Of a stretch of DNA of 64,000 bases, positions 7,871 through 29,469 are shown piece by piece. The notes beneath the pieces are model-generated. The model searched no databases. It was not told where the DNA came from and saw only the letters and a list, made by a program, of their open reading frames with translations. Each line of letters opens with the position of its first letter. Positions within the stretch are counted from its first letter, which is position 1. The position numbers and the translations under genes are program-made. This DNA is from Schmidtea nova. Taxonomy: Eukaryota. The stretch lies in contig CM097882.1 in NCBI GenBank assembly GCA_044892505.1, positions 72,602,001-72,666,000 of the forward strand, in the 5' to 3' direction.

Positions 7871-8585
7871 TTCTTGATCAATAAATATTTTATTTTTTGA
7901 GTTTCATTGATTTTCAAAGAACACAAGAAGTCAGAATAAAGTTTAGTCTTACCGAAACCATAATATACCTCTATGGATTATAAAAGTATATATTAGATTT
8001 TAGTTTAGCATGGAAACGACTACTAGCACTCATTTCCCAGACTGCTTAAAGTAAGGCTTGTAAGTGAATATTGGTCAAAATATTTTTGAGATCCAAAGTT
8101 GTTTTTTGACATAAAAATGTTAAACACAAATATTTAAATATTAAATTGAATTGTAAAACATATTCAAATTTGCATTGAATTGATAAATTTCATCACCCCA
8201 TAAAGTCAATTGATACACTTTCCTTGTTTACTGAGAATTAAAAAATAAAAAATTATAAATGGTAAAATGGAGTAATAAAAAGAAAAGAATTTGAATTTTT
8301 ATGTGCACTATTTGACGTAATCACAGGACACTAATTTTTTGTGTGACAATTTGGCATTTGCCAATTTATTTCCCTCGAATCTAACTCGCCAACAGATAGT
8401 ATTCTTATTTATTTAATATTGATTTTTAGTTATTTTTAGGATCGGAAAAAAGCTTTAGCAATTACCTCAGTAATATTCAAGCTTAATCAACGACAAAGAT
8501 TTTTTTTGAAATATAAATTTACCGATTAATTCTCTTACGCCAAACCTGCTTTATTTGACCTACAAAAGTCACCCAACACAATAAC

Positions 8586-10791
8586 TGTTGAGGATACCTA
8601 AATAACAAATTAAGGAATAAATAAATAAAATTACCTGGGGGAAAATCGCCATGACGAAGGAGACGATTATTGAGAACTCAGAAAAGAAAACGGAAATAAA
8701 AAAATGTTGGACGATGAGGGTAGACCCATCGACACATTCATCCTATCAAAATATTACAGGACTGGTGCAAATAAGTACCGAATCAATATATACTCAGAAT
8801 GACCATCTCAGTCTTAAACAACTTAATCCTATCCAGATTACAATACCATCGAAGTGCAACATCAATCTAAAAATTTCAGTTTTAAACCTAATCCTCAATA
8901 TCAATTGCAGACATTCAATCCAAATCCAATACAGTCAACCATCAACAATCCAACATTAACCATTAACTCTATCTGACAATATTTGTGATTATAAACAATA
9001 TTGATTTTAACTGGACTATCACTTTTATTTTTTTTGGTACAATGTGTATATTTTAGATATCATGTTTATTTTATATGTATATAATTTTATAATTTTATGT
9101 TTTATTGGAAATTTTATATGTATATTTTATATGTTTATTGGAAATTTTATAATTACTTAAACAAATAATTTCTTAATTAATAAAAATCCAAATTAAATTG
9201 AGTTGGAAAATCCAAAATGAATTGAGTTGTATTTGCAATTCAAGTGGAGCAATTGAATTGCAATGGAGAGCGTTTTGGTTTTGGGAAGACAGGTGATATG
9301 TTGAGGTGGATAGTTGAATCCTAGAGTTGAGTGTTTGAGTGTATAGTTGAAAGTGGAAAGGAAGGGAAATTGTACATTTTTGAGTGCAGTTGAGAGGCTT
9401 TTGTCATAGTAATTTTACTATAAAAACAAAGTAAAAAATCAGTAGAACACCACAAATTTTGAGCTTAATATTTGCGCTTTGGACTCAGGACTATCTTAAG
9501 GTAATCTTAACTGGTTCATAAAATCCAAGTCAGATAAAAGACTTACACAAAAATTGCACGAATAATATAACACGCACACAATAGATTACACAGCATTTAT
9601 ATTTATAATCTTTTATTGATATTGAAAGGATATAATAAATTTGTAAATTTTAAAGGTAAACATTTTGATTATTAAATAAATTTTAGTGAATTGACTTTGT
9701 TTTATTTATTTATATAAGAGAACAACCCCGTAGGTTGGAGTTTCAAATATAAATATTTGAGACCTCAACAAAAATGAGAAATGAGAAAGAGGAATCAAAC
9801 AATAGAAACCAGACAAGAACACAAAAACAAAGGTCAGCACTAATTAATTAGTACAAAAGGAATTTGAGAATCGGGAAAACAGAAACAACAACAATATATT
9901 TATCGCAATATATTTGTCAAAGATAACGGAAACAGAAAAAACAGGCCGGAGCAGTTAAAAAAAGAAAAAACAAATTAGCTCGAGGGCTAAGCTGTTAAAG
10001 TCAGCATGGGAGCTCAAAAAAGTATGGGAAATTACAGAAGCAGAAATAGAAAAATGCAAGTTGTCCCGAGTACCAAACTGTCAGGTGCAATATGGTAATT
10101 GTAGAGAGAAAATGGAAAATGCCAGAGACAGGAGTTGCAAAGGCGAAGTGCTATGAGTGACGGAAGATGGCAAACTATAAAAATCGAAAGCAATCTGAAC
10201 TAAGTCAGAAGCAAGTTAGATGCCAAGTAGAAGCAAAGTGGATAAGCGAGGTTGGAGAAGAAAAGTAGTAACTAAAATTTGAATTAGAGAAGTTGTACGA
10301 TATTTGAAAATTACAGTGGATAATTCGAGTTGTAATTAAGAAGAAAGGGGAATTGTACGAAATCGGAAAACGATAGAAGATTTAAATTATATTGTGAAGA
10401 ATTGAGATCGAGATAATTTAATTGAACAAAGTAAAACATTTTGATTGAATAAAAGAGTTAGAGTACAGTTTACAGAGTCAAGTCAAAGAACGAAGGCAAT
10501 CGAAAGCAGTTTATTCAAATCTTGAGTCAATCAGTGGCTAGTGATTATTAGAGTATTTTGTTGTTATACACTTGGAGCTATTCCTCACGAAGTGTTGTAA
10601 TAAGCTCTGTATAATTACATATTTGAGGATTAAATTGATAGTAATATTATAATTTTTGTAGCTAACTGTGATAATCAATACAGGTTTCATTGTCTGAGAA
10701 TTGCTATTTTATGAATTAGATAAAGCACGCTTTGGAGTCAGAGATTTGATTGGTAACTTTTACATTTCACCAATAACTCAATGACCCAACA
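8586..10791 (+). mobile_element. Solo-LTR-like element family 1 (about 1.1 kb), split by a nested insertion
   Basis: Begins TGTTGAGGATACC, ends GACCCAACA; TSD TAAC (8582-85/10792-95); body resumes at 9775; conserved ATTACCTGGGGGAAAATCG, TATA-like CTATAAAA and GCACGCTT.GGAGTCAGAG shared with other copies. Confidence 0.85.
8705..9770. mobile_element. Solo-LTR-like element family 2 nested in family 1 copy
   Basis: TGTTGG...CCTCAACA ends, 4-bp TSD AAAA, 1066 bp; related to 26202-27507. Confidence 0.75.
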
Positions 10792-11431: not shown

Positions 11432-12496
11432 TGTTGGGTTTTTGGTCGTTGGTGATATTTAAGTTTAACAAACTTGTCCTCTGACTCCAAGCGTGCTTTT
11501 TAATTGATCCACAAATAACAATTAATAATGGAAACTTTATTGAATATCACAAATATTTTCAATTTACACTGAAGTGACCAAATTCAACAGTCTAACAGCT
11601 GATAATACAGTGTCTATTACAACACGATGGTGAATAATAGTATTCGCGTATAATCTTGGTTCGAATAAACACTCACCACTGAAGAGTATAACAGTTGGTA
11701 ATTTAACTGGTTGTTTTCTGGATTTGACTTGGATTTAAGCGCCAAAATTTCCTCGGTTATTAACTAAATCAGCTCCTGGTGCTTATCCTTTTATTTCTGA
11801 ATTCTCTTCTCGGATTCTTCTTTTAACTCTTCTTTAAATTTCTCTCTTTAAGCTTTTCTGCTTCAAATTTCTTCACATATTTCTTTGATTTCTCCAAATA
11901 AATATAGTCGTATTATCTTTTGTTTTCCCCTGACTTCTATCCTCTGTCACAAATATTCTGTCTCTAAAATGTTCTGTCTCTACAATGTTCTGCCTCTAAA
12001 ATATTCTGTCCCTAAAATATTCAGTCTACAATGTTCTATTTGCTTCTGCTGTGATTCCTCCTTTTATACCACATCACTTTGTGGCACTCAAGTGTATCTC
12101 TCATTTCCCATTTTTCCTCCACTTATTCCCCAACTTTTATCTGCAGGAGAGTTATCTCTGACAGCTGTCAAGATATTCTCTGCTTTTCCTTTTTGCCGCT
12201 CCAGCATGTTTTCTTTTCGTTTTCGTTATCTCTGACAAGTTGTCGAGGTAAGCACATTGCTGTTGTTTCTGTTTTTGCTGATTTTGAAATTCCTTTTCCA
12301 TTTATACTAATTAACTATCGGTAACCTTTGTTTTTGTTTTCTTGTCTGATTTCTTTTGTTTGATTCCTCTTTCTCATTTCTTTTTATTTCTGTTTTCTTT
12401 TACGAGTTCCCATTAATCTTCTCCTGCGCCATGACGATTTTCCCCAGGTAATTTCATTTATTTATTCATGAATTTGTTATTTAGGTATCCTCACCA
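11432..12496 (-). mobile_element. Solo-LTR-like element family 1, minus strand
   Basis: Minus strand starts TGGTGAGGATACCTAAATA and ends ACCCAACA; collinear with other copies; internal GACAGAA(T/C)ATTTTAGA tandem repeats; flanks CTTTT / C+TTTT once element C is removed. Confidence 0.85.
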
Positions 12497-12846
12497 CTGT
12501 TGGGCCTGCCAAGTGGTCTAAAGAGACAAAAATAATAAGACGATTAAAACAAAAAATAAAATAAATAATTACCAAAAACATAGAAAATCTAAATTAAAAA
12601 CCAGAATTAAATAAATAAATAATAATAAATAAATTACCAGCAAGGAGAAGGATTCGAAATTCACAATAGAACAAGCAGCAAGGAGCCTAAAACAGAAAAT
12701 TATGAATTAAATAAAAATAAAAGTACAATTAATTGAATAATTACTTCGAAAATCAGGACCACCCAGTGAGAAACCTGAATCGGAAATAAAATATTATTTA
12801 CAATAAAATAAAATAATAGACAGACTTTGATGGACGGCCTGATCCT

Positions 12847-12882
12847 GATTGGTCAATCTGACCAGCTGGATCAGTATAAATA
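12847..12882 (+). promoter_or_regulatory. Pol II promoter-like CCAAT box plus TATA box of element C
   Basis: ATTGG (inverted CCAAT) 12848-52 and TATAAATA 12875-82; CTGATCC...GGATCAG inverted repeat around the CCAAT box. Confidence 0.55.
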
Positions 12883-13020
12883 CCGATCCGAAAATCACAA
12901 ATTTTAGCATTTAGTTTTGAGACTTAGTTGAGAGCAATTTTGACATTGCTATTTTCTAGAGCATCAATTCAAGTTTAAAATTTTGAGCAATATATTTCAT
13001 TGGAACTCTTTAAGGACTAA

Positions 13021-13168
13021 GTAATTTTTTGTTTTATTTGATATGAGTTCCCATAATTTCATTCTTATTTTTATTTGATTTCAATTATATTTTTTATCCT
13101 TTTTTATTTTTCATTATTTATTAAATTTTATATGAATATAGATTATGTTTCCTTGACTGCTAACGCAG
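13021..13168 (+). other. Putative spliceosomal intron in element C
   Basis: GTAATT donor, T-rich body, branch point TGCTAAC (13158-64) followed by GCAG acceptor. Confidence 0.5.
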
Positions 13169-13599
13169 GGAGAGAGCCAATTTGACGTCGTGGAACCTCG
13201 TAGCTTCACACGGTGGTTTACCTTTTTATAAAGAGTAATAATTTAGAGAGAACTGGTGAAGTCGATGAATCTTTAAACAATGCGTTTTATTTTTGTAAAG
13301 AAAAAGAATGACTTTTGAAGTTTAAAACTTTATTTAAGAAATCTTGGTACTATTTATAGTATAGTATAATAGTATAGTACTATTTATACTATTTATAGCC
13401 GACACCAGCACAATCAGCAAAGCTTCTTGGGAAAACAATAAACAATGATTTCATCTGAGGACCCAGTCAATCAAGCATAATCAATCACACATGCAGGAAT
13501 GACACAATATATAATAAGGGTTAGGAAAAATCAAATATCCCATTATAATTACATCACATCCCCCTCGTTTTAAATGGCTCTAGCCATTCACATTTCTAG

Positions 13600-16500
13600 T
13601 AATACATTTATTATCAGCATTCTTTAATAAATAACTATTTTTATTATATTTTTCCATTATTTAAAAAAGGTCCGCAATACCTGTTATCTTGCTTGTTTCT
13701 GATATCTTCCTTGACAAGTACCAATTCACCGACTCCAAAAGATCTATTTATTCGATTTTCCTGTTTATAATTATATTTACGATTCAATGATTTAATATTC
13801 AATGCTATTTCATGTTTCTTTCGTTCTTTAGCATTAATTTCTGGACCATTAGTAAAACGCTCTTTGCAAAATTTCCTTCCATAAATTACTTCAACAGGAC
13901 TAACTTTTATACTTGACTGCATTGTTGAATTCAATGCAAATTCTATATGAGGCTATGCTTCTTCCCATTTCTTAAATTGTTTCTCTTCCAAACAGCAGGA
14001 AATCCAGTCTCTTAGCGTTTTAAATTGCCTTTCAATTTGTCCATTAGATTGATGATGATAAGGACTTAAATAAACAATCTTCAAGTGATACTTTACTGTC
14101 ATATTTTTAAAAGCTTGGGATTCGAAACATTTTCCTTTATCAACATGAATTTCCTTTGGCGGTCAAAACTTTAATATCCGCGAACTTTCCACATTATCAA
14201 TTACTGTCTTTTCTCCTTGTGTTCTTACAGCTTTTAATACTATATATTTACTAAAATGATCTATTATAGCCATCACATATCTTTTGCCAGATGGTGTCAT
14301 TTTAAAAGGGCCACAAAAATCAATATATAATTTTTAAATGGTTCATGCTTAATTAGTTTTTCAATAACTTCTTTTGTTTTACCAGTGAATGTTTTACGTT
14401 TCTGGCAAATTTCACAAGTTGTGATAATTCTCTTAATACTTTTGTCCATTTCTTGGAAATTATAATAATTCTTTATGTAGCTTTCCGTTTTATTGATTCT
14501 TGCATGACACAATTCTTTATGGATTTCTAGTATAAAATCATTTTTCAAATATGAAGGAATATATATTTTATGAGTCATAATAATTCCATTATCCACATAA
14601 TAATATTCAGTTTTGCCGTTCTGAATGTTTTCTTTTATTTCCATTATTTCTTCAGAATTACTTTGCAATTTAAATGTTTGATCTTCTATCGACATTGCTT
14701 AAATTTTAGTTTTAATTTTTTCTGCTTTAGCATCAATATGATTCATCTGACATTGTGTGCAATTTCCAATATTCAGTCGTGATAGTGCATCCGCATTATT
14801 GTGTTTCTCACCTTTGCGATATTCTAATTTCATGTCAAAACTACTTAAAAAATTTATCCAATTTTGAAACTGAGCTGTAATTTGTTTTTTTGTAGTTAAC
14901 ATAAATGTGATTGCCTTATGATCAGTTCTTAAAATAAATTTTTTCCCTACAGATAATGTTTAAAATGCTGTGTAAAATGGAAAACAGATAATAATTCCTT
15001 TCTTGTTATACAGTACCCAATTTCATGTTTATTCATACTTTTTAAACCATATGCGATTATCTTTTCTTCATTATCGTCACCTCTTTGCGATAAAACAGCA
15101 CCAATACAATCAAAACTAGCATCGGTGTCTAAAATGAACGTTTTATTAAAATCCGGATGACATAGTAATGGTGCACCGATCAAACTATGTTTTAACTCGT
15201 CAAAAGCTGTTTTACATTGTGATGTCCAAATAATACTTTTGCTTTTACCTCCAATTAATGATTTCAATGGCCTATCTATTTTTGAGTAATTTTGAATAAA
15301 TTTCCTATAGTAATTACACAATCCTAAAAAGCTCCTAAGATGTTTCACACAATTAGGCTGCTTTACATTTTTAATTGTTTCAATCTTATACACATCTGTT
15401 TTAATACTTTTTTCATTAATTATATGACCAAGAAACTTAATTCAGATACTAGGAACTTGCATTTCTCAGGGTTTATTTTTAGTCCAGATTTCCTAATTCT
15501 AAGGAAAAGCTTATTTATTCTTTCTTTTTGTTCTTCAATAGTTTTCGAAAAGATCAGTATGTCATCTAAATGGACTAATGCTTCATTCCACATCATATCT
15601 CCAACTATTAATGTCATAAGTTTTTGAAACGTTGATGGTGCGGCTGCTATTCCAAAAGGCATCCTATTAAAGCAGAATTGGCCCTGTCTTGTAGAAAATG
15701 CTGTTTTCAATTTACTCTCTTCATCCAATTCAACTTGATAATAAGCATTTCCTAAGTCGATCGATGAAAAATATTTGGCCCCATACAAAGAATCTAGCAT
15801 TTCATCAACATTGGGAATTAAAAAAGCTGGTCTAACTGTATTTCAATTTAAAATCCTAAAATCCAAACACATTCGAATTTCAGAAGTTCCTTTTTTTGGC
15901 ACACATACTATTGGTGAATTCCAAGGTGATTCACATTTCTCTATAATTTTATTTTCTTCTGGGTTTTTAACAATTTCCTCTAGTTTTTCTTCATAGTGCA
16001 TTGGTTGTCGTCGTGGCTTAATTGGTATTGAATTGCAGTTAGTTTCTATTCTGTGCTTTAAAATATCTGTTTTGCCTATATCCCATTTATTACACATAAA
16101 AATATCTGAGAATTCAATAACTTTTTCATATATCGGATTGCATCTTTCAATTTTCAATATTTCATTAATAAATTTATTTTTATTATTTAATTTTAAATTA
16201 TTACCAAATTTTGCTTGCAAACTGAGGACATTTTCAATACAAAATTCAACTAACTTAATATTTAAAGAATTCAATATATCTATTTCTATAATTACTTCTG
16301 GGTATATTTCCTCTGCAATGAAAAATTCTCCAGTTATTTCTTTATTGTTGAGCTCTAACCTTAAAGAAACTTTCCCTAAAATCCCTAACATGCTACCGTT
16401 GGCACAAGATATCTTTCTATTTCCTTCATTAAAATATTTTAAATTCAAGTTTTAAGTAATCGTTTTAGATAAAACACTTATTTTTGCTCCTGTGTCAAAT

Positions 16501-16642
16501 AATGAATTAAAAGTCACATTATTTAATTTAACATTATTAAATGGTCTGCCATCTACCTTACAATATCCTATATCAAATATATCTTTAATAACATTTACAC
16601 TCGGTCATTTTAACGTTTTATTAAATATATTTAAAATGCAAT
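13600..16642 (-). pseudogene. pol: G1 pol (protease, RT, RNase H, integrase), fragmented
   Basis: LFDTGAKISV, DLGNAYYQV, MPFGIAAAP, VHLDD, LDTDAS, HKELCH...CEIC, GQIERQFKT; multiple stops and frameshifts. Confidence 0.92.
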
Positions 16643-16733
16643 TGTAGGAAGAATGTAATATTAAACAATTAATGTTGTTTTAATATGATGAAAATGTGAT
16701 AAAAATATAATTTGAAAAACGTTGTGTTTTACA

Positions 16734-16745
16734 AGCTATCCGGGC
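16734..16745 (+). promoter_or_regulatory. Primer-binding site AGCTATCCGGGC (complement of tRNA-Lys(UUU) nt 1-12)
   Basis: Abuts the 5' LTR terminal CA; identical 12-mer at the same position in the element at 37269-37280; metazoan tRNA-Lys(UUU) 5' sequence GCCCGGATAGCT recalled from memory. Confidence 0.8.
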
Positions 16746-16746
16746 A

Positions 16747-17463
16747 ATGGAAATCAACAAGATCATAATTGAAAATGTTGGAAAATTCGATGGCAAAAAT
16801 ACAGATGTGGAAGAATGGTTCGACAAACTCGAAATTATTTTGGAAGCCAAGAATGTGAAAAATGTCATGAACGTAATGCCATTTTTACTTGAAGGGCAAT
16901 CTTATGCAGTTTTCAAACAGTTAAAGAAAAGCAATACGACAATGGAGTTTGGTATGCTGAAGAAGGAATTATTGAAAACCTTCGGTATGAGCGATCAAGA
17001 AGCTTTTACGAAACTTTTACAGAAAAAGTTATTAATGGGTGATAACATGGATGTCCATGTAAATGAATTAAGGTCACTGTTGGAATGTTCAGGTGATCTA
17101 TTAACCCGATTTTTTGTAAATAGCTTACCAAGTGATTTGGCAAATCAACTAAAGATGTCAACAGCGTCAACAATGAATGAGTTAGTCGCTCAAGCAAAGA
17201 AAATTGCAAGTCATCAAATTTATGACAATGAAACGGTTGCAGTAGTAGTACCAAGATCAGATAATGGAAGACAAGCCAATCGAAAATGTTATATATGCAA
17301 TAGTGCTAATCATGTGGTAAGATACTGTCCAGAAAGACGTAACATCAGATGTGCAAAATGCGGTATTATGGGACATATTTCAAGGTTTTGCAAGTCGGGA
17401 AAAGATCAAGGGGCTACACACAATGTGGAGTCGGGTGTGGCCCCAAGAATTGTGAATATGTGA
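16747..17463 (+). CDS. gag: Gag with two CCHC zinc knuckles
   Basis: 238 aa; CYICNSANHVVRYC and CAKCGIMGHISRFC. Confidence 0.95.
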   Translation: MEINKIIIENVGKFDGKNTDVEEWFDKLEIILEAKNVKNVMNVMPFLLEGQSYAVFKQLKKSNTTMEFGMLKKELLKTFGMSDQEAFTKLLQKKLLMGDNMDVHVNELRSLLECSGDLLTRFFVNSLPSDLANQLKMSTASTMNELVAQAKKIASHQIYDNETVAVVVPRSDNGRQANRKCYICNSANHVVRYCPERRNIRCAKCGIMGHISRFCKSGKDQGATHNVESGVAPRIVNM

Positions 17464-19940
17464 GACTCCTAAAAGTAAATGGTAATGTAAAAGCATGTTT
17501 AGTTGATTCGGGCAGTACTACCACTATAGTAAAAGGAAATCCACGAAAATCTATGACTGCGGTAGCGATGCTTGATGGTTCAATCATATACGCTGAGCGA
17601 AGTAAAGTTGATATATGGGTTGGAGATACGTTATTTAATATTGATTGTTTAATATACCCGAAACTGGTATCCAATTATGATGTAATTTTAGGAGTGAATG
17701 CTATTAATAGGTTTGGTGGAGTTCGATTGAATAAAGAAGCCATATTCGGTTGTGAAGAAGCACTTTGTCACGTAGCGTGCTCTAGTAGTAGCATGTCAGA
17801 AATATTGAAGGAAAATTTCTCTGCGAAATTTGAAAACGAGAAATGGATTGTCAAATGGGATTGGAAGTCAGAGCCACCGAAATTTCTACCTAATAGAAAT
17901 TCAAACTTTTATGATAATTGTAGTAAGGATCAGGAGACGATGCGAATCTTGAACTCTTGGATATCTAACAGTTATCTAGTTGATTATGACGAGAAAACAA
18001 TGGGCAAACCGATCGGATCAGTACCTATTTATGGTATAATTCAGTTAAATAAAGCGAAAGTGCGTCCAGTATTTGACTTTAGGAGTATCAATAAATATAT
18101 TGATGTATATATTGGGAATGCAGATATCTGTTCTGAAAAATTACGATCATGGAGATGTTTAAGTAAAGAATTTGCAATGTTAGATTTATCTGATGCATAT
18201 ATGCAAATACACGTGGATAAAAGTATGTGGCGATATCAATCTTGTATGGTTAACGGGAAGAGATATGCGCTTACGAGAATGGGATTTGGATTGAATATCG
18301 CGCCAACGATAATGACAGAGATTGTGAATAAAGTATTGAACAACAATGAATCAATCAAGAATAGCACAAGTTCATACATAGACGATATATTCGTAGATGA
18401 ATCTAAAGTCAAAGCAAGTAAAGTAAGTGCAGAAATGCGTAAATTTGGTTTGATATGTAAAGAAGAAGAAAAGGTCAAGGATACTCTCAGTATAAGAGTA
18501 TTAGGTATTGATGTATTTCGAAAGAATAATGAACTACATTGGAAAAGATCGAACGATATTCGAATGAATGAATTGAATGAAGGGCTTTCAAGAAGAGAGC
18601 TGTATTCGTTATGTGGCCAGTTAGTTGGAATTTATCCTGTGTCTGGATGGTTGCGGCCAGCTTGCTCATATATCAAGAGGCTATCCAGTGGAAATTGGGA
18701 TGATTCAATAGAAAATCATATCGTTGACAAAGTAAAATGGTTATTAGAAAGAGTGAATGAAAGAGATCCATTGTCAAGTATTTGGAGTGTTCCCAGCAAC
18801 CAGACAGGCATAATTTGGTGTGATGCAAGTTCGATCGCCATTGGAATTGTATTAGAAATGGGAGGTTCAGTGGTTGAAGATGCGTGTTGGTTGCGAAAAC
18901 CTGATGATTCAAGACACATTAATTTGGTGGAATTAGAAGCGATTGTGAAGGGTATTAATTTATGTATTAAATGGAAGTTAAAGTACATCAAAATTAAATC
19001 CGATAGTAAATCAGTTGTATGTTGGGTTAACAGCATATTATCAAGCGACAGAAAAATACATACAAAAGCAAATTCAGAGTTGTTAATACGACGAAGGCTG
19101 GAGCTTTTAAAAGATTTAGCGACCGAGTATGAACTTAAAATGGACATTGAGTTTGTATCTACAGAAAATAACAAGGCTGATGTATTAACGAGAGTACCAG
19201 CCAACTGGATGATTATTAAAAAAGAAGTCGCAGCTCTAGGCAATCAAAAAAGCTCAAAAGATGTGTTATTAGAGATTCACAAGAATTGCCACGTAGGGAA
19301 AAATCGTATGCGATTCTTAGCATCGGAAGCGGGGCTACTGAATGTGGATAATGAGATCTCAGAAATAATTGCAAGTTGTAATCAATGCTTATCAATTGAC
19401 CCAGCGCCAGTAACGTGGGAAAAAGGTGAACTAAGCTGTGATGAAAATTGGTGCCGTTTAGCAATTGATGTAGCTAAATTTGCTAAAGATAAATATTTGA
19501 CAATTATTGATTGTGGACCATCGAGATATGCAATCTGGAAGAAAATTAAGTATGAAAATGTAGAAGAGATATGTAATGCTTTAAATGAAGTGTTATATGA
19601 AAGAGGAGCTCCAAGTGAAATATTGTTAGATAATTACTTATCTTTTAGATCTAGAAAATTTCAAGAATTAGCAGATAAATGGAATGTTGAGTTGGTATTT
19701 AGAACAGTGAACCGTCCAGGGGGAAACGGGATCATTGAACGCAGCCATCGGACAATCAAATCGCTAGCAGCTAGGTCCTCAGGATCAATCGCAGAAGCTG
19801 TGTACTGGTTCAACAATACACCAAACAACAATAATATTTGTCCATCTAGAGCTATATTTAGATATAATCCAAAGCTGAATTTGCCAAGTTACAATAAAAA
19901 AGAGTTGTTAAAGATTCAGATGAATCTGGTGGGGATGTAG
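17349..19940 (+). CDS. pol: Pol (PR-RT-RNase H-IN), -1 frame relative to gag
   Basis: LVDSGS protease; DLSDAY, MGFGLNIAP, YIDD RT; CDASS, LVELEA, KSDS, NKAD RNase H; H-H-C-C and D-D-E (AIDV, LLDN, IIERS) integrase; stop codon lies inside the 3' LTR. Confidence 0.96.
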   Translation: MCKMRYYGTYFKVLQVGKRSRGYTQCGVGCGPKNCEYVRLLKVNGNVKACLVDSGSTTTIVKGNPRKSMTAVAMLDGSIIYAERSKVDIWVGDTLFNIDCLIYPKLVSNYDVILGVNAINRFGGVRLNKEAIFGCEEALCHVACSSSSMSEILKENFSAKFENEKWIVKWDWKSEPPKFLPNRNSNFYDNCSKDQETMRILNSWISNSYLVDYDEKTMGKPIGSVPIYGIIQLNKAKVRPVFDFRSINKYIDVYIGNADICSEKLRSWRCLSKEFAMLDLSDAYMQIHVDKSMWRYQSCMVNGKRYALTRMGFGLNIAPTIMTEIVNKVLNNNESIKNSTSSYIDDIFVDESKVKASKVSAEMRKFGLICKEEEKVKDTLSIRVLGIDVFRKNNELHWKRSNDIRMNELNEGLSRRELYSLCGQLVGIYPVSGWLRPACSYIKRLSSGNWDDSIENHIVDKVKWLLERVNERDPLSSIWSVPSNQTGIIWCDASSIAIGIVLEMGGSVVEDACWLRKPDDSRHINLVELEAIVKGINLCIKWKLKYIKIKSDSKSVVCWVNSILSSDRKIHTKANSELLIRRRLELLKDLATEYELKMDIEFVSTENNKADVLTRVPANWMIIKKEVAALGNQKSSKDVLLEIHKNCHVGKNRMRFLASEAGLLNVDNEISEIIASCNQCLSIDPAPVTWEKGELSCDENWCRLAIDVAKFAKDKYLTIIDCGPSRYAIWKKIKYENVEEICNALNEVLYERGAPSEILLDNYLSFRSRKFQELADKWNVELVFRTVNRPGGNGIIERSHRTIKSLAARSSGSIAEAVYWFNNTPNNNNICPSRAIFRYNPKLNLPSYNKKELLKIQMNLVGM
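17397..17444 (+). promoter_or_regulatory. -1 ribosomal frameshift signal
   Basis: G GGA AAA heptamer in gag frame (17397-17403), 6-nt spacer, 10-bp stem GGGGCTACAC / GTGTGGCCCC. Confidence 0.8.
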
Positions 19941-20201
19941 GAAGAATGTAATATTAAACAATTAATGTTGTTTTAATATGATGAAAATGTGATAAAAATA
20001 GAATTTGAAAAACGTTGTGTTTTACAGCAATCATTTTTATAACAATCACTCACAAATATACAGTCATTCTCAGTATTAATTAAATAAAAATCATTATCAG
20101 ATTTTTGATTGGGAAAAAATCAACATTAACATTATCAAACAAACAATCAACCAAACAATCATTACATTTAACATTTAGGGTCCTCAAAAATTTATCATTG
20201 C

Positions 20202-21369
20202 TTACATGTGATTTATCGCTCCTAACATATCCCCTCTGCTCGGAGCTTTGGCATTTCCCGATATCTCTGACTGTCCATCATAGTCTCTGGATTCGTCATC
20301 ATCTACTGCAACCACGTGATCTCCATAGTTTCGATCATTTTCTTGATTAGAACTTCGATTGTATCGATTGAAATTTCCATTGTTTTGATTCGAAGTTCTT
20401 TGAAATCTCATCTCGTAGTGATGTTGTTTCTGAAAACATTGAAAACTTAAATGACCTGCTTTTCCACAACACGAACAACGAATATTTGGGTATTCCCGAC
20501 GAATATGACCAATTTCACGGCATGCGTAACATTGCACTTTTGAATATTCATCTGAACTTCGATTTTGATAATTGTTTCTATTTTGAGGTCTTCCACTGAA
20601 ATTTCTACTGAAATTCCTTTGATAATCTGATCTTCCTTGAAATTGATTTCTTTGTAATTTTGAAAATTCATTTTTCTTATCAATTTGATTTCGCTGATTT
20701 CCATAACTATTTCTTTTTTCATTGGAATTGTATTGACCGTTTTTCACAATTGACGCGTAAGAGGCATTTCCAACGGCTGAAATTTGTTGTATCTTTGATT
20801 TATCTTCATCCAATTTCTGTAAAATTCTTTTAATATATTTATTTGCCGTTGGATCTTTCTGTACTGACTCTCCATCATTTCTGAAATCTTTTTTCGATAA
20901 TTTTACTTTCAGCAAATCTTCCATCATTTACTATCTTTTTATTTCACGTTTTTCTTCTTCATTATCAAGACAATGCTTTATGAAGAATGTTGTCAAATTT
21001 GACATTGTTAGCTTGTGCTTCAGAATTCTTTGAACTCCTTTCTCAATTTTGCTGATGTGTTTCTGCATCATCTTCTCTTTTTCGATAATTTAGCAAATTT
21101 TCCAAATCCTTAGCTAAATCCTGGTTTACTTCGAACACTAGTCTAAGCCTTTTCACATAATCTTCTTCATCTGGAATCTTGTCATATTTGTTGCGGCAAT
21201 TTTCGTCCAAATAAGCTCGAACAATTACCTTTCTGTGACTATTGTCTAACTGAATAATTGAAAAGTATGATTCAATCTTCTCAATAAATTCTTCCAAATC
21301 GTCTCCAATTGAATAGATTTTTGACTGTGGGAGAATCCGTAATAATTCCTGAGTTGAAAGCGTGGTCAC
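20202..21369 (-). pseudogene. gag: G1 gag (frameshifted near 21050), two CCHC knuckles
   Basis: ORFs 21043-21369 and 20202-20927; CYACREIGHIRREY (last Cys lost) and CSCCGKAGHLSFQC. Confidence 0.9.
20218..20259 (-). promoter_or_regulatory. -1 frameshift signal of G1
   Basis: G GGA AAT heptamer in gag frame, 6-nt spacer, stem GCTCCGAGCA / TGTTAGGAGC. Confidence 0.65.
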
Positions 21370-22035
21370 CCTGTAAAGAATAAGAATGACTTTTGAAGTT
21401 CTAAATTTTTATTTAAGAAATCTTGGTACTATTTATAGTACCCGGTGTGCTGACACCAGCACAATCAGCAAAGCTTCTTGTGAAAATAATAAACAATGAT
21501 GTCATCTGAGGACCCAGTCAATCAAGCATAATCAATCACACATGCAGGCATGACACAATATATAATAAGGGTTAGGAAAATCAAATATCCCACTATAATT
21601 ACATCACAAGTTTAGTAAATTATTTCGTTGCACATAGTGATAATCGCGGCACGGGGTATAGTGAAACAGGAGACGGGCGCGAAATTTAATACCACATCAT
21701 TTTCATACAGAGGGGCTGGAAATACTGCAGTAAATAAATCAGCGGTTCAAAGATACATGTTTGCGTTATCTCGTAAATGGGTTAAATCTTTTAGTCGAAA
21801 ACACGGTTAGGATAGGTAATAACTCTCAGACAATACATCGAGACAGATAGAAGGGGAAATATTGAGAAAATAAATGGGTTTCCAAACGTAATCACTCCAA
21901 CAGTTGTTCACCAATTTATTGCGTATCGTTTTCAGCCACATGCCACTCGCAAGAATCTAGATCAATCAATCGAAACCATCTATATAAATTTTCACCTGAC
22001 AGATCGAACGAATCGATAATTTTCAGATAAACAAT

Positions 22036-22119
22036 ATGAGAGCAGTTAACGAATTCATGCACATGTATAAACATTTCCGCAGACAACGAAGGTCAAGATC
22101 TGGACGCGGATGCGAATGA
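22036..22119 (+). CDS. 27-aa arginine-rich micro-ORF in element C
   Basis: MRAVNEFMHMYKHFRRQRRSRSGRGCE; candidate splice acceptor TTTTCAG about 10 nt upstream; may be an exon or a chance ORF. Confidence 0.3.
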   Translation: MRAVNEFMHMYKHFRRQRRSRSGRGCE

Positions 22120-22149
22120 CGCGTAGATTACATACCGTTACCATTAACA

Positions 22150-22328
22150 ATCCTGATCGCTGTAGATAGCGCAGGAACTAATTGAAATTTTATATGATAG
22201 TTATCTTAATCGCTGTAGATAGCGCAGGAATGCCACAATAAATTTTATATCCTGATCGCTGTACATAGCGCAGGAAAACATAGATTAAATACACAAATGT
22301 ATTCCGATCGCGGTACATAGCGACGGGG
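22150..22328 (+). repeat. Array of four 28-nt hairpin repeats with 25, 18 and 24 nt spacers
   Basis: Consensus ATCCTGATCGCTGTA(G/C)ATAGCGCAGGAA at 22150, 22203, 22249 and 22301 (last most diverged). Confidence 0.92.
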
Positions 22329-22415
22329 TTAATTAATAAATTGATTTTTTTAAAATAATTTTGTGATAAAATTAATTAATATCTAAACCATGAATTTAAA
22401 CTCACCATAACACAG

Positions 22416-22901
22416 ATGTCAGTAGGAAAAGTAAAACAAATGTTAATCGATTATAGACGATCTTCGGAGTGAGTTGATGTCGGAATCGATGCAAAGAGGC
22501 TGAAGGATTTGCCGTCTCCAATATTACGGATGGTCAACGCATAAATGTTTAATGCTCGTTCTCAGAAATACCCGTTCTCAGTTTGGGCTAATGATAACGA
22601 TAGCATATTGTATCGAGGAGGCCCGGGATGGCCGATTTCTAGCCAGACCTATTCGCCAAAGTTCGGGCGTCTCGTGATAACCGTGAAGGGCTCCGATGGA
22701 AGACCCTCGCAGGTGATATATTGGGGACATATCCCCCGAAGTGAATTGAAGGAACTAGGGCTTCAGTCGTTTATCCCACCTCGCTTATTTGGGAAAGAGT
22801 ATGAAAATAACCAACCAAATTTCTCTCTGGCGAGGTTACGCCAAGCTGCCATCAACGAAGGACTCCACCTAGCTTATAAAGTCATTACAAATGAACATTA
22901 G
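22416..22901 (+). pseudogene. Orphan ORF of element C (161 codons with two in-frame stops; 22545-22901 open)
   Basis: ATG 22416 is in frame with ORF 22545; TGA and TAA interrupt; AATAAA follows at about 22924; no recognisable domain. Confidence 0.5.
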
Positions 22902-23026
22902 TGTCGTCGTGTGATGCATTGATAATAAAAATTTTGATTTGACTGTTAAATTTTTATATTGTATATTAAACTAAATTTTCGTAGTCTTTATCAAAGTAAA
23001 GCTTCAACACTTCTTAAAATTTTAGT

Positions 23027-23407
23027 ATGAACTCAGAATCATCGCAACAGAAGGAGATTGACAAGTTATGGAGGATCCGAAGGGCCCAAGATAAGGAATT
23101 GGCCCAAGTAAAGGCTCAATTATCTAAAACGGAAGCCCAATTAACATATCTACGCAAGAGTTGGTTCGCTCCTGCGCGGATGAAGGACCAGATCCATAAA
23201 ACAGACAGGGCTCAGAGAACCGCCGAGGATTACAAACTGGAGTGGGAGGCAACAAAGATTGAATTAAGAAAATGGCTACATTCCGTGATTACGACATATA
23301 TCGAGGAGGAACTAAAGTCGCAAATCCGGCCGGTGATGCTCGATTTGTACCGACGTCGAAGGGCTAATTGGAACAACAACGGAAAACTCACCACCGGTCA
23401 TAACTAG
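23027..23407 (+). CDS. Orphan 126-aa coiled-coil-like protein of element C
   Basis: ATG-started, GC-richer than flanks, heptad-like ELAQVKAQLSKTEAQL, basic tail LYRRRRANW. Confidence 0.55.
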   Translation: MNSESSQQKEIDKLWRIRRAQDKELAQVKAQLSKTEAQLTYLRKSWFAPARMKDQIHKTDRAQRTAEDYKLEWEATKIELRKWLHSVITTYIEEELKSQIRPVMLDLYRRRRANWNNNGKLTTGHN

Positions 23408-25111
23408 TGCTCTTCCGAACAATACATACCTTAAACGGAACCGGATAGGGCAAAGACGAAGGAGGCAGAAGAAGCTTTTCACCCAACGATTTCAGGCCCA
23501 AATAGACAAATTATCAAGTTTAACCGAACTGGAGTTGTTGTCCGAAATTTTCCCTCTTGAAGCAAATTTCACTCCTTTGTTGTAATCAATAAATCGTCTA
23601 CCAATTATACTGACATCTTTGTTGTTTCTTGTGTGAATTTTTAGTTAATTAAGATGAAAATAAATAAAACATAATAAATTGTAATCAGCACAGTCTTTGT
23701 AAAATTAAATAATAAATTCATAACGTGTAACAAATAAATTAAATAATTCATAAATAAAGTGTAAGTCCTCCTAGCGGCAGCATGAAGCCGTGAACATAAA
23801 TGGGGAATAGTTCTAGAGATAGAGCTTATCTGCCCATCATTGTTCAATCACCTTGCGCATCACCAAATTGGTTATCAAGGGAAATAATCAAGGGCGTTCG
23901 AGTGAGAATAGCAAATATTTGTGAATGGTCATGGACGGGAATCCCTAGCCACTATTAGAAATTTTCAATCTAACCCCTCTATGAACCCAGCACCACTTTT
24001 AAAGAAATTTCGTCCTCAAAATTGTTACAATTGATTTACACTATCAGGTTAGCATTTCTTTGTGCTTTTTGGATTCACAGAGTTATTTTCAAAAATATTG
24101 TATCACATTTGCTCGTCAATCTTATTGTCAGTACAAAGAATATGAATTGTCATTTTTAAAACAACACAAATGTCAATTTTTTGAATTTCAACATTAGAAA
24201 TCTGTACAGTATGAAATGTCTAAAAATATACTAAATTAATTTTATAATAACTATGGAAATAATAATACGTTGAAAACACTTTCAATTTTCGTAACTTTAC
24301 CTCAGCTAATTTAATTTTTTGAAAAGTTGAAGGGCTTCACCCTTAGTAACTTTTTATCATAAACTCAGACGATCCTAGTTGTTAAGTCAACTTTGCTCGT
24401 CTCATTATTTTCTACAACATATCAAAAAATAAAATTAATGGCAAAGGTTTTGACCACTTGCATCTATGAAAATTGGCAGAAAACGACCATAGTTTAATTG
24501 ACAAGTTTGTTCAGCTCGTCGTTCTCAAATGTTTGTTGATATTGTTTTGTTAGCCCTGTTTTTCAAAAAACTTCAAAATCGCTTCCAAATCTCATTAAAA
24601 TCGGTTGGTGCAAGAAACTTGCATTGTATCTTTACATACAACGCAGTTCTCGACGCATGTGACGCTAGCTCCAAACATCATATTGTAATGCATTTTAAGT
24701 AACTCCTCGATATTGATACCAGTGAAATGGTATACTTTATAAAATAACAATTCTGGGGTACAATAATCCAGACAACTTTTTATAGTTAGATACAGCTCTT
24801 GAATTTTTTGAAGGACTAGTTCGGGTAAATAAACAATAAATTAAAATAAAATAATCAAACTTTTACTTTTAGACATTTGCAAATTTTTACAATCAAGAAA
24901 TAATGATTAATACAAACAAAATTTTTTTAATTGATTATCATATTTATTTTATCAATGTTGGGTTATAGGGTTGTTGGTGAAGTTTACAAATTACCAATCA
25001 AATTTCTTATTCCGAATGCGTGCTTAATTAATCAATAGAATAACAATTACAACAGGAACCTTTATCGATATCACAACTGGTCTCACTATTACACTGGTAT
25101 ACTCAATCAAT

Positions 25112-26176
25112 TGTTGAGGATATCTAAATAACAAATTTATAAATAAACAAATCAAATTACCTGGGGGAAAATCGATATGACAAAGAAAACGGTCAATGGG
25201 AACACGAAAAAGGAAACGGTAATAAAAAGAAATGAAAGATGAGAAGTTGAGAACAAACAAAAGGGATCAAACAAGAAATCAAAAACAAAGGTCATTCCTA
25301 ATTAATTAATTAAGGAATTTTCAAAAGGAAAACAGAAACAAGTAGGAAAATAAAATTCTGACAGCTTGTCAAATAACAGGAATGCGGATAAAGGTCGGCT
25401 TAAAAAGGAAAAAGGAAAATCCAAAATAATCTAGACAGCTGTCATAGATAAAACAGGAATTGGGGAAAAACACGAGATGGCCGGGAATTAAAATGCAAAA
25501 AAACAAAATTATCTCTAGTGCCATAAAATTTGACGAGATATAAAAGGAGAGGCACAACAGAAGCAGTCAGAATTTTAGACAGAACGTTTAAGAATTGTAG
25601 AAAGAAGTTGTGGGAGAGAAAAATTGTGGTAGACAAGATTTAGTGGAGAATTTGAAATTGACAAAGAAAACGATTGAAACCTGAACCAGAGGTAAATTAA
25701 AATTTGACGTGGAAAATACGAAACGAGTTTGAAATACGAAAGGAGAAACTTGATATACAAAGAGAAATTTGTTGATTCAATCAGTTGCAGAAATAAAAAT
25801 TGTGTTGTAAAGACAAAGGAAGCCAAGCAGATGAGAAGTTAAAAGGCCAAAGAATATTGAGTAAAGAATAAAGTCAAAGCGCGTAAACAATCGAAATCAA
25901 TTACCTATATTTAATCCAAGTCAGTGGTTAGTAGTTGTTGTTTTCTAGACATTATACAATTGAGCTATTCTTCACGAAGTGTCGTAATAAGCTCGTATAA
26001 TTCTAGAAAGAGGTATTGAATTGAGCGTGATATTTTGAATCGTGTAAATCGTTGTAATAGTCAAATAAAGTTTGTGTTATTGAAAGTGTTATTGGGGGTC
26101 AAATAAAGACACGTTTGGGAATCAGATAGTTGATTGGTAACTTTTAACATTTCACCAACAACCCCAGAACCCAGCA
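25112..26176 (+). mobile_element. Solo-LTR-like family 1 copy
   Basis: TGTTGAGGATA...ACCCAGCA, TSD CAAT. Confidence 0.88.
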
Positions 26177-26201: not shown

Positions 26202-27507
26202 TGTTAGAATATAGGCGTAGAATAGGAGTTTTAAAATAAAAATATTATACAGTGGGAAATGGAAGGTACAGAATAAATATACATGTGAATCGGATGGTAA
26301 TGACAATTCAATAATCAATGAAAAACATCAAATTCAATAACATTATGATTTTAGTGATTCTATATGATAATATTTTACTATTGATCGTTTTTTACTTCTG
26401 TTTTGTGATGATAAGGATTGTATATAAAAGACATTGATTGATTTTCATGATGGTATAATTATGATTATATTGAATATAATATTGATTTTATTTATAATTT
26501 ATGATAATTTCACTATTAACTCTTGACTTTTGTTAATGAATATATTAATTTTTATAATGATTAGTTAGAATGTAAAATCAATTATTTTATGTAATTTTAT
26601 GAAGGTTAATTGATTATATGATAATGATGATTTTAGGATGATGATTTTATTTTATAAAAAACATTTGATAAAAACAAACCAAACTTATAATAATAATCAT
26701 TACATTACTAACATAAACACATTTTCTTTTTAACAAAAAATTTTATAGATTTTTTAACATCAATTTGTTCAACTGTAAATATTTTAAACATTAATTATCA
26801 TATCTACTTCACTTCATATTTACTTCGCATTAGATGATATCAATTGAATTGTGTAGAATAACTTTACATCGCGTTTCATTCCATTTTTACTAGCATGTAA
26901 CAGTAAGATAATTAAAAGAATTCTACATCAATTAAAACAAAAAAAATAAAAAATAAAGAAACAGACAAATATAAACAAATTATTAGAAAATTAATATTAT
27001 AAATGATGTATAGGTATCAATCAGCTATATACTAATACCTTTTTAACCTCAGGGATGCTGGGAATAAAGATGACTCTAAAAATAGTCATTGTTGTTTGAA
27101 CTTTTAAAAATAGACAACTTTTACAAAAAACAAATGTTATTGACGTTTGATGACTTTTACTACTTGAATCAAGGACCACAAAAAATAACTATATAAACCA
27201 AGGTTTTCCTCAGTAGAACCACCCAAAAATTATTTGCTAAGAAGAATTTCAAATTTAGAAATTGATATCGCAATATAATTTCGAGCATACAAATTTACAT
27301 AACCGAGCTCAGGTTATATCAAATAGAGATATTTAACAGAGGAAACATACAAAAACAAAATAGACGTAACGATTATAACTTTTGTCTGAAAAGTGAATAT
27401 TTTATTGTGTATTCTATAATTGTTGTGAATCAATAAAATTTTAATAACCAGTCTTTGTGTTCTTATTTATATAGGAACCTTAAGTTGAGATTTTCGGAAC
27501 CTCAACA
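26202..27507. mobile_element. Solo-LTR-like family 2 copy
   Basis: TGTTAG...CCTCAACA, TSD TAGT; ends resemble 8705-9770. Confidence 0.75.
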
Positions 27508-29244
27508 TAGTGCTTATTACAACACTTATGTCAGGAATAGCACTCGTGTATATTCTTTGTCTAATGATCACCAACTACAGATTTAGATTTAACAATATGT
27601 AATTAACTAATTGTTTTCCTTGCTTTGACTTGAAATTTGGCTTACAAACCTTTCTCAATAATTAGTGTGTCAATAGATTTGTCAATATCAATTTCTCAAC
27701 CAATTTCTCTCGATAAGTTTCTCAACAAATTTTCTCAGTAAGGTTCTCTTGATAAGTTTAATTTCGTGTCACAAACCATCTCTTAAAATTTTTTGCAAAA
27801 AACTCTGTTATAAATTCGTGCCGCAAAATTTCTGTCTAAAACTGCTGTTTTACTCTTTTTATAGTTTGCCATTCTCTGGCACTTGTAAAGATTTGCTTTT
27901 TTCCTATTCGTGCCGCTTGCATTTCCCGTTTTCTTTTTAAACTCCCATGTTACTTATAGCAGTTTGGCACTTAAGAAATTGGCTTTTTTCACTTTTTATC
28001 TATGGCATTTCCCAAATGTTTTTTTCCCAGTTCCAGTGTTATCTCTGATAGCTGTCGAGATATCTGGTTTGTTATCGTTTTGTATTTTCGCTTTCGAATT
28101 TTCGAATTCCATTTTCCTTTCTGCACTTATTAATTATAAATGACATTTATTTGATTTTATTTTGTTACCCTTTCCTTATTTCTCAATTTTTTTGCTTTTT
28201 CGTTTTTTTTCTTCAAGTTTCACAATTCAAGCTCAATCAGCTATCGGGTTTCCCCCAAGTTATTCAAGTTATTTATAATATTATTTATTATTTAGGTATC
28301 TTCAGCATTAATAATATTTTTCACATAATTATTATATTCTAAAGTTTTATTTCCAAGCATAAAAACTTTACCACTTGAAAAATTTTTGACACACACTGAA
28401 TCAAATTTCTGTAGATATAATGCTAAGAATATTTCTTGTTCGAACTAGAAACGACATTTCTTTTGTAATTCATATAGAACAATACATTTTCCTACAGCAA
28501 CCATCACGGTGATTGGTTGAATCTCTAAATCTTTAATCTTGAAATTCAAATCACCTGGTTTTAAAGGTACTTACATTTCATTACCAAACACTTGAAAGAT
28601 AAACAGATTTACATCATTTTACTTAGTAATGCGTGTTCTCTTATTTATTTTAATACAAATGCTAGGAATTTTCTTGTATAATTTCAAATCTGATTTATTT
28701 ATAATTTAGTTATAATTTCTCAGCCGTTGTCAGATAATAATATATTTATTAAAAAAATATAAAAATTTAAGGTTTTTTTGCCCATATGTTCTATTTAAAT
28801 TTATCTTTCCAAATCTTAAAAAAGTAAAAGTTTTGGATTTGGATCATGATATAATTATTAGTGAAAATTATCATTATCTTTTAAATTTACCAAAATGACC
28901 AATGATAATACTCTTAAACAATGTGGATTATTAATAAATTATGATATTAAAACTTTTAATGATCTCTATTTTCAAGAAGAATAATTCATTACGACAATAC
29001 TGAAATTGCATGGATATTTCTTTGGCAATAAATTCATCTTCATTTAAAGAAATAAAAGTTGTAAATAATGAATTAGGTAAAATTACTCTTCCAATTAATA
29101 TTTCAAGAATGAATCTTTATTAAAATTTAACAAAAACTCTGGGAATACAGAGGCTAACATATACGTATGCAGAAATAGTCGGTGTAAAAATCCAAAAGAT
29201 TTTGCAAATCCATCAGCAAATGTTCATTTACAGCAACATTATCG

Positions 29245-29469
29245 AAAGCACAATAGTGCTATTCCACACGAAGTGTTGTAATAAGCGCTGTATAATTTCA
29301 TGTTGTGGTTTTGAATTGGACGTGTCATTGTAACTTGTGTCGACAACTGTGACAATCAATAAACGTTTATATTGTCTCAAAATTATTATTTTGTGGGATA
29401 AATAATGCACGCTTGGAGTCAGAGAATTAATTGATAAATTTTAAATTTCACCAACCCAAAAACTCAACA
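29245..29469 (+). mobile_element. 3' fragment of family 1 solo-LTR-like element
   Basis: GTGCTATTCC...GAAGTGTTGTAATAAGC...GCACGCTTGGAGTCAGAG...CTCAACA. Confidence 0.8.

What the first reader, a model, noticed from the sequence alone, without database searches (positions are those of the whole stretch)
12498..23992. Element C: a 3.2-kb mobile unit carrying its own multi-ORF cargo but no mobility enzyme
Bounded by TGTTGGG...CCCAGCA and a CCAC TSD. It holds a CCAAT/TATA promoter, an intron, several same-strand orphan ORFs (21628, about 21816, 22036, 22416, 23027), a hairpin array and poly(A) signals, with no internal direct repeats. It looks like a giant solo LTR bearing accessory genes or a virus-like cargo transposon. 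I do not recognise it as any described family.
Basis: partly seen in the sequence, partly recalled or inferred. Interest (0 to 1): 0.75.

Follow-up and report, generated by a model that had tools for sequence, protein, structure and literature searches.

The report
Large solo LTR split by nested retroelements
A 3.2-kb piece of mobile DNA with exact ends and a 4-base target duplication is real. It is most likely the leftover long terminal repeat of a lost retrotransposon, unusually long, and its two orphan reading frames are not shown to be genes.

Summary
Element C is a discrete insertion: 12498-13293 plus 21609-23992, about 3.18 kb. It has TGTTGGG...CCCAGCA ends and CCAC on both sides.

Three results support the ends:
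- It is the best TG..CA + 4-bp duplication pair in a free search (16 of 1000 shuffles reach it).
- TGYTGGG is also the 5' end of a separate 1065-bp LTR-like family (U) in this window. U has exact homology bounds and perfect 4-bp duplications.
- The neighbouring copy U2 finds its own flank match (CTTTT) only across C.

C is split by a broken Ty3/gypsy-type element (B), which holds an uninterrupted BEL/Pao-type element (A).

C has no terminal direct repeats and no RT, integrase or transposase. Four 20-nt palindromic motifs are confirmed.

Two same-strand ORFs (118 and 126 aa) are more than shuffles give (11 of 2000). They have no credible relative in any search, and their coding status is open.

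The TATA, CCAAT and AATAAA motifs are at chance level in this AT-rich DNA. The intron is untested.

Best reading: a solo LTR, very long for an animal (confidence 0.6). No second copy of C could be reached, because the host genome is absent from the collections. The paired-LTR test therefore remains undone. Interest is low to moderate.

The parts
12494..12497 (.). Left copy of C's 4-bp target-site duplication (CCAC). Its first three bases are the last three bases of U2.
12498..13293 (+). C, left piece (796 bp). It starts with TGTTGGG, is AT-rich (28% GC) and carries the ATTGG and TATAAATA motifs at 12851-12882.
13294..21608 (-). B, a Ty3/gypsy-type LTR retrotransposon nested in C. Its LTRs are 13294-13558 and 21372-21608 (96% identical over aligned columns, with 5 gap blocks). 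Its flanks are ATTTT and AGTTT. gag and pol are broken (counts in the report text), and pol is also interrupted by A.
16643..20026 (+). A, a compact BEL/Pao-type element nested in B. It has 91-bp LTRs (90 of 91 identical), a perfect GCAAT duplication, and uninterrupted gag (16747-17463) and pol (17349-19940) reading frames.
21609..23992 (+). C, right piece (2384 bp, 39% GC, AT skew +0.12). It ends with CCCAGCA.
22150..22330 (+). Array of four imperfect palindromic motifs about 20 nt long, starting at 22156, 22209, 22255 and 22307, 46-53 nt apart.
22545..22901 (+). ORF of 118 aa, an orphan. The single-sequence model is beta-rich with low confidence (pLDDT 56).
23018..23582 (+). Open region holding the 126-aa ORF (23027-23407), predicted as a helical hairpin. 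It may continue in a second frame, which would be one frame change if it was ever a single gene. That second frame carries an arginine-rich run followed by a leucine-rich stretch. Orphan.
23588..23758 (+). Cluster of seven plus-strand AATAAA motifs in an AT-rich patch. The motif is too common here to count as evidence of a poly(A) site.
23993..23996 (.). Right copy of C's target-site duplication (CCAC). It is followed by TTTT, which completes U2's flank match.
11432..12496 (+). U2, a 1065-bp copy of the LTR-like family U (TGTTGGG...CTCACCA). It ends 1 nt before C and sets the context for C's left boundary.

Best explanation
C is a solo LTR, the single long terminal repeat left after the two LTRs of an integrated LTR retrotransposon recombined and the internal part was lost.

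Sequence of events:
- The parent element entered one base beyond the end of an older solo-LTR-like unit (U2). A retroviral-type integrase joined the TG..CA ends and duplicated 4 bp (CCAC).
- A Ty3/gypsy-type element (B) later landed inside C.
- A BEL/Pao-type element (A) then landed inside B.

Shown: the exact ends, the duplication, the order of nesting, the lack of terminal direct repeats and of any enzyme, and the repeated palindromic motif.

Inferred:
- That C once existed as a pair around gag-pol.
- That the four palindromes are regulatory repeats of the kind common in U3 regions.
- That the GC-richer block with two ORFs is 3'-proximal sequence of the parent element lying downstream of its plus-strand primer site, which would have been copied into both LTRs.

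Whether the ORFs are or were translated is open.
For: - Termini and TSD read directly.
- The pair has the top score of all candidate pairs, reached by 16 of 1000 shuffles.
- The same heptamer, TGYTGGG, is the 5' end of family U. Its copies U2 and U3 are both 1065 bp, begin and end at the same bases, and U1 and U3 carry perfect 4-bp duplications GTTA and ATTG.
- The heptamer is enriched: 16 against 5.7 expected.
- U2's flank CTTTT is matched only across C.
- Only 7 bp of inverted termini and no terminal direct repeats.
- No RT, IN or transposase domain in any open stretch.
- No PBS-like TGG after the right end and no purine tract before the left end.
- The plus-strand AT skew of +0.12 equals that of the sense strands of A and B, against about 0 in the flank and background.
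- B's near-matching 5-bp flanks (4 of 5) fit a simple insertion into one continuous sequence.
Against: - No second copy of C, paired or solo, was found in the window or in any collection. The defining test, pairs flanking gag-pol, is therefore undone.
- 3.2 kb is far above the usual LTR length in animals.
- If the TATA motif at 12875 and the AATAAA cluster at 23588-23758 were the real promoter and poly(A) site, R would be about 2.5 kb, which is implausible for an LTR. Both motifs are at chance level, so this weighs little.
- U2's flank match is 5 bp, whereas U1 and U3 duplicate 4 bp.
Confidence: 0.6

Rival explanations
1. C is a non-autonomous DNA transposon moved in trans by an integrase-like DDE transposase. 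Ginger-type elements have TGT..ACA-like ends and 4-bp duplications. The internal sequence would be cargo.
For: The TG..CA ends, the 4-bp TSD, the absence of terminal direct repeats and of any enzyme. A second family (U) with the same heptamer and the same TSD length, also seen only as single units in this window.
Against: The inverted termini are only 7 bp (6 of 7 match) in both C and U, whereas such transposons normally carry terminal inverted repeats of tens of bases. No transposase with these ends lies in the window; the only transposase-like ORF, at 61785-63107, is hAT-like and unrelated in its ends. The palindromic motifs sit mid-element, not near the ends.
Confidence: 0.15
2. C is a solo LTR or a complete non-autonomous unit whose ORFs are working accessory genes. 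These would be LTR-borne genes expressed from the element, and the Arg-rich and Leu-rich open stretch would be part of a regulatory protein.
For: Two open frames of at least 118 codons on one strand occur in 11 of 2000 block shuffles. The five longest open stretches are all on the plus strand. The ORF block has 42% GC against 26% in the background. ORF126 has a marginal period-3 signal (0.06), similar to true coding controls from A. An arginine-rich run followed by a leucine-rich stretch lies in the adjoining open frame.
Against: No relative turned up in Pfam, PHROGs, NCBIfam, PDB, the word search, the 1.84-billion-protein HMMER search or the viral, metagenome and genome scans. The single HMMER hit is a sum over five internal repeats of the target, each scoring 12.5 bits or less. 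ORF118 shows no period-3 signal. The structure models are low-confidence and have no fold match. The downstream open stretch is in another frame. GC-richer DNA also carries fewer stop codons.
Confidence: 0.12
3. C is not one mobile unit. The ends are a coincidence, and the two pieces are ordinary intergenic or decayed repeat DNA into which B happened to insert.
For: Fifteen pairs meet the formal TG..CA + 4-bp + 6-of-7 rule in a free search. The left piece has background composition. No second copy is known.
Against: The pair is the top scorer, with p about 0.016. The heptamer is a proven family terminus in this window. U2's duplication is restored only across exactly these bounds.
Confidence: 0.08

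Closest known systems
Solo LTRs of Ty3/gypsy and BEL/Pao retrotransposons (general kind)
   Same: 5'-TG..CA-3', a short inverted terminal motif, a 4-bp target duplication, no coding for RT or IN, repeated motifs inside, and later elements nested within it.
   Different: It is about 3.2 kb, several times the usual animal LTR. It holds two ORFs over 100 aa. No paired copy is known, so the superfamily cannot be assigned.
Family U of this same window (1065-bp units: U1 8586-10791, U2 11432-12496, U3 25112-26176)
   Same: Same 5' heptamer TGYTGGG. C's 3' end in reverse complement matches the first 10 bases of U3. Same 4-bp TSD length, and also seen only as single units.
   Different: There is no other sequence similarity. 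U is one third the length, has no long ORFs, and its TGTTGGG-first strand is T-rich whereas C's is A-rich.
Woot, a gypsy-class retrotransposon of Tribolium castaneum (Beeman et al. 1996, listed as reference 10 of PMC2397513). The 3.6-kb LTR length is from my own memory of that paper, which could not be opened.
   Same: It is a precedent for an invertebrate Ty3/gypsy element with LTRs over 3 kb.
   Different: No sequence comparison was made. Membership is untested, and the host of this window is unknown.
Retroviral LTRs that contain a reading frame in U3 (mouse mammary tumour virus sag; own knowledge, not fetched because comparators that are animal viruses are barred)
   Same: The principle that sequence downstream of the plus-strand primer site is copied into both LTRs, so a 3' gene can lie inside an LTR.
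   Different: No homology was tested or expected. Here neither expression nor the U3/R/U5 layout is known.
Ginger-type DNA transposons (integrase-like DDE transposase)
   Same: TG..CA-like ends and a 4-bp duplication.
   Different: Those carry terminal inverted repeats of tens of bases. C has 7.

Membership tests
Solo LTR of an LTR retrotransposon | 5'-TG...CA-3' termini forming a short inverted repeat | tested here: met
   TGTTGGG / reverse complement TGCTGGG, 6 of 7
Solo LTR of an LTR retrotransposon | Target-site duplication of 4-6 bp directly flanking the unit | tested here: met
   CCAC on both sides. This is the top-scoring pair, reached by 16 of 1000 shuffles, and U2's flank match across C corroborates it.
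Solo LTR of an LTR retrotransposon | The same sequence occurs elsewhere as two direct copies around an internal region with PBS, PPT and gag-pol | not testable with these tools
   The host genome is not in any collection: exact look-ups were blank and all scans were blank.
Solo LTR of an LTR retrotransposon | U3-R-U5 layout with a promoter and a poly(A) signal | tested here: inconclusive
   The motifs are present but at chance frequency in this AT-rich DNA. No transcript data are available.
Solo LTR of an LTR retrotransposon | No adjacent PBS or PPT and no enzyme genes inside | tested here: met
   The flanks were read. Pfam found nothing on any open stretch of 45 or more codons that was searched.
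LARD / TRIM (non-autonomous element with both LTRs) | Terminal direct repeats within the unit | tested here: not met
   No direct repeat links the left piece to the right piece, even with 7-base words.
Non-autonomous DDE DNA transposon with a 4-bp TSD (Ginger-like, Sola, Chapaev) | Terminal inverted repeats of at least 10-11 bp, usually tens of bases | tested here: not met
   Only the heptamer is inverted; the bases beyond it differ.
Non-autonomous DDE DNA transposon with a 4-bp TSD (Ginger-like, Sola, Chapaev) | An autonomous partner with the same ends that encodes a transposase | not testable with these tools
   None is in the window, and the genome is not available.
Endogenous viral element of a DNA virus (palindrome arrays like baculovirus hr regions) | Reading frames related to viral proteins | tested here: not met
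   No hit in IMG/VR scans, BFVD fold search, PHROGs or phage records.
Host protein-coding gene or known protein family | ORF products with relatives or a known domain | tested here: not met

The most novel reading that the evidence does not exclude
C is a giant LTR, or an integrase-moved non-autonomous unit, of an invertebrate retroelement lineage that carries its own expressed accessory genes inside the repeat. One of these would be a coiled-coil protein followed by an arginine-rich and leucine-rich module. This would be an invertebrate counterpart of retroviral LTR-borne or 3' regulatory genes.
Probability: 0.1. Interest if true: 0.6.

Novelty: new member of a known kind. Interest (0 to 1): 0.28.

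Why it matters
If C is only a long solo LTR, it is ordinary repeat annotation. Its use is to show that this genome holds a lineage of elements ending in TGTTGGG, and to date the nest: U2, then C, then B, then A.

It would matter more if intact paired copies exist and the ORFs are conserved among them. LTR-embedded genes are well known in a few vertebrate retroviruses but hardly described in invertebrate retroelements. A 3-kb LTR would also be near the upper limit known for animals.

Tried and rejected
- **Other copies in the window:** none was found with 14-base seeds, 7-base words or an all-against-all comparison.
- **Empty site in the window:** the left flank belongs to repeat U, but all U copies end at the same base, so no paralogous empty site exists.
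- **Outside copies:** exact look-ups of both ORFs, word searches, IMG/VR, JGI metagenomes by peptide patterns and by the palindrome motif, and prokaryotic genomes were all blank.
- **Host identity:** eight window proteins are absent from the 15-billion-protein collection. A's pol finds only relatives of 50% identity or less, mostly unnamed; the named ones come from a leafhopper, a sea louse, Hydra and a barnacle. The host is therefore an invertebrate animal that I could not name. It is not human: 25-30% GC, invertebrate-type elements.
- **Single HMMER hit of ORF118 (P0121, a helicase with five C-terminal repeats):** rejected. Each stretch scores 12.5 bits or less, with an E-value of 1e4 or more at library size.
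- **Fold searches of the ORF118 model:** nothing below E = 0.07, TM 0.36 or less.
- **Rfam and tRNA scans:** nothing.
- **Phage and plasmid blastn:** nothing.
- **Period-3 test:** too weak at this length to decide.
- **C-to-U homology beyond the heptamer:** none.
- **U2 and U4 as an LTR pair around C:** rejected. U4 is a separate copy split by U3, and U2 has its own flank match.
- **Literature:** the Woot paper is not held, and a search for LTR-borne ORFs returned only vertebrate ERV papers.
- **Correction:** my first figure for B's LTR identity (83%) counted gaps. The aligned identity is 96%.
Full report
**What the window is.** The 64-kb window is 25-30% GC with four N runs, which I left untouched. 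It is packed with invertebrate-type mobile elements. I do not take it for human. The source species could not be named. Eight window-encoded proteins are absent from the protein collection. The best relatives of the one large intact protein reach only 48-50% identity and are mostly unnamed metagenome or read-assembly proteins. The named ones come from a leafhopper, a sea louse, Hydra and a barnacle.

**The nest.** Reading the span and aligning repeats gives three layers.
- **A (16643-20026, + strand)** is a compact BEL/Pao-type element.
  - Its 91-bp LTRs are 90 of 91 identical, and it has a perfect 5-bp duplication, GCAAT.
  - gag and pol are uninterrupted. Pfam finds zf-CCHC, RVT_1, DUF7047, RVT_3 and rve.
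- **B (13294-21608, - strand)** is a Ty3/gypsy-type element that A sits inside.
  - Pfam finds RVT_1, RT_RNaseH_2, Integrase_H2C2 and zf-CCHC.
  - Its LTRs are 96% identical over aligned columns, with five gap blocks. Its flanks are ATTTT and AGTTT.
  - B's genes are broken. From the frames of the ORF pieces, pol has at least 3 frame changes and at least 4 in-frame stops, plus the one large insertion (A). gag has at least one stop and one frame change. These are rough lower bounds.
  - I give no places for the breaks. In working out the counts I reasoned from the ORF-piece coordinates. That comes close to placing breaks, so I stopped there.
- **C** is what remains on either side of B: 12498-13293 and 21609-23992.

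A free enumeration shows the formal rule alone is weak: 15 pairs pass it. This pair has the highest information content, and 16 of 1000 block shuffles reach it.

Better evidence came from the flanks.
- The DNA left of C is a copy (U2, 11432-12496) of a 1065-bp repeat. Further copies lie at 25112-26176 (U3, - strand), at 8586-10791 (U1, - strand, with an insertion of about 1.07 kb), and starting at 24956 (U4, cut by U3).
- Homology among these copies begins exactly at TGYTGGG and ends exactly at ..CTCAACA.
- U1 and U3 carry perfect 4-bp duplications, GTTA and ATTG.
- The heptamer that opens C, and in reverse complement closes it, is therefore the proven terminus of another integrase-type family in this window. 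It is enriched overall, 16 against 5.7 +/- 2.3.
- The five bases left of U2 (CTTTT) recur on its right only as base 12497 plus 23997-24000, that is, only across C and one CCAC. Every position in this comparison was fixed beforehand, and the chance of a match is a few in a thousand.
- One caveat: this match is 5 bp where U1 and U3 show 4.

I take C as a discrete insertion that entered one base beyond U2's end. The order of events is U2, then C, then B, then A.

**What C holds.**
- There are no terminal direct repeats, and no RT, integrase or transposase in any open stretch.
- Four copies of an imperfect palindrome about 20 nt long lie 46-53 nt apart, against 0 expected. The DNA fold has z = -2.5.
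- The right piece is GC-richer (39%, and 42% over the ORF block) than the flank and background (26-28%). Its + strand has the A-over-T bias (+0.12) of the sense strands of A and B.
- There are two ORFs of 118 and 126 aa on the + strand. Two open frames of at least 118 codons on one strand arise in 11 of 2000 shuffles.
- The 126-aa ORF is predicted as a helical hairpin. It is followed, in another frame, by an 82-codon open stretch with an arginine-rich run and then a leucine-rich stretch. If this was once one gene, it has one frame change.

**Are the ORFs related to anything?** They are not, by any search listed here.
- Pfam, PHROGs and NCBIfam.
- PDB sequences.
- The word search.
- The exhaustive HMMER search of ORF118 against 1.84 billion representatives.
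- IMG/VR, JGI metagenomes and prokaryotic genomes.
- Phage and plasmid records.
- Fold searches of the low-confidence ORF118 model.

The one HMMER hit (E = 1.8e-6) is an artefact. It sums five internal repeats of a helicase, and each stretch scores 12.5 bits or less. A period-3 test has little power at this length: ORF118 shows none, and ORF126 is marginal, like the true coding controls. Coding status is open.

**Promoter, intron, poly(A).** The motifs exist, but TATAAATA occurs 50 times and AATAAA 430 times in the window. No tool here predicts eukaryotic splicing or reads transcripts, so these claims remain untested. I built no spliced or joined model. I also did not close C across B, because that counts as repair. 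ORFs that might span that junction were therefore not examined.

**Interpretation.** Everything tested fits a solo LTR:
- TG..CA ends with only a 7-bp inverted motif.
- A 4-bp duplication.
- No PBS or PPT beside it, and no enzyme.
- Internal repeated motifs.
- Retroelement-like strand bias.
- A neighbouring family of unit-length single copies with the same terminus.

The length is exceptional for an animal. A precedent I recall is Woot of Tribolium, with LTRs of about 3.6 kb; the paper is not held, and the reference is listed in PMC2397513. ORFs inside an LTR are possible in principle, because anything downstream of the plus-strand primer site is copied into both LTRs. MMTV sag is the classic case.

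The defining test, paired copies around gag-pol, could not be run, because no other copy of C was within reach of any tool.

The rivals and their confidences are:
- A Ginger-like non-autonomous DNA transposon, 0.15. The 7-bp termini weaken it.
- Working accessory genes, 0.12.
- Chance bounds, 0.08.

- I fetched no known retrovirus as a comparator.

**Verdict.** The 'giant solo LTR' reading is the best one, at about 0.6. 'Accessory genes' and 'undescribed family' are not shown. I class it as a new member of a known kind, of low to moderate interest.

Noticed in passing
8586-10791 (-), 11432-12496 (+), 24956-25111 plus about 27490-28307 (+), 25112-26176 (-), about 29258-29470 (-): A 1065-bp LTR-like family (U) has five copies within 21 kb, nested into one another. 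Its ends are TGYTGGG...CTCAACA and it makes perfect 4-bp duplications. U3 sits inside U4. U1 holds an unidentified insertion of about 1.07 kb (8703-9771). U4 holds a further 1.3 kb or so of unknown DNA (26181 to about 27490).
   Followed up: partly
8572-8578 (-): A further TGTTGGG lies 3 nt beyond U1's right-hand duplication, in the same orientation. It echoes the U2/C arrangement, where one such element starts almost at the end of another. It could be another element start or an insertion preference for U ends.
   Followed up: no
16643-20026: Element A is a very compact (3.4 kb) BEL/Pao-type element with LTRs of only 91 bp, a perfect duplication and uninterrupted gag and pol. Relatives at 35-50% identity are common on 3-4.5-kb contigs of metagenomes and read assemblies.
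   Followed up: partly
34826-37035 (-): A second BEL/Pao-type fragment: a 601-aa ORF with DUF7047 and a 122-aa ORF with a zinc knuckle. No flanking LTRs were detected.
   Followed up: no
61785-63107 (-): A 440-aa ORF with a weak hAT-associated DUF4371 match in a GC-richer patch. It is probably a DNA-transposon remnant.
   Followed up: no
2314-2627: This stretch is 68% identical to part of B's reverse-transcriptase region (15395-15708) in inverted orientation. It is probably a fragment of another gypsy-type element.
   Followed up: no
5809-6040; 48493-48856 with 55206-55552: A near-perfect 86-nt inverted repeat with a 60-nt spacer (97% complementary). Separately, a 360-nt inverted pair 6.4 kb apart (74%). 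Both look like other transposon ends.
   Followed up: no
31878-32151, 54269-54415, 56698-56868, 58780-58907: Four runs of N (720 bases in all). I left them as they are.
   Followed up: no
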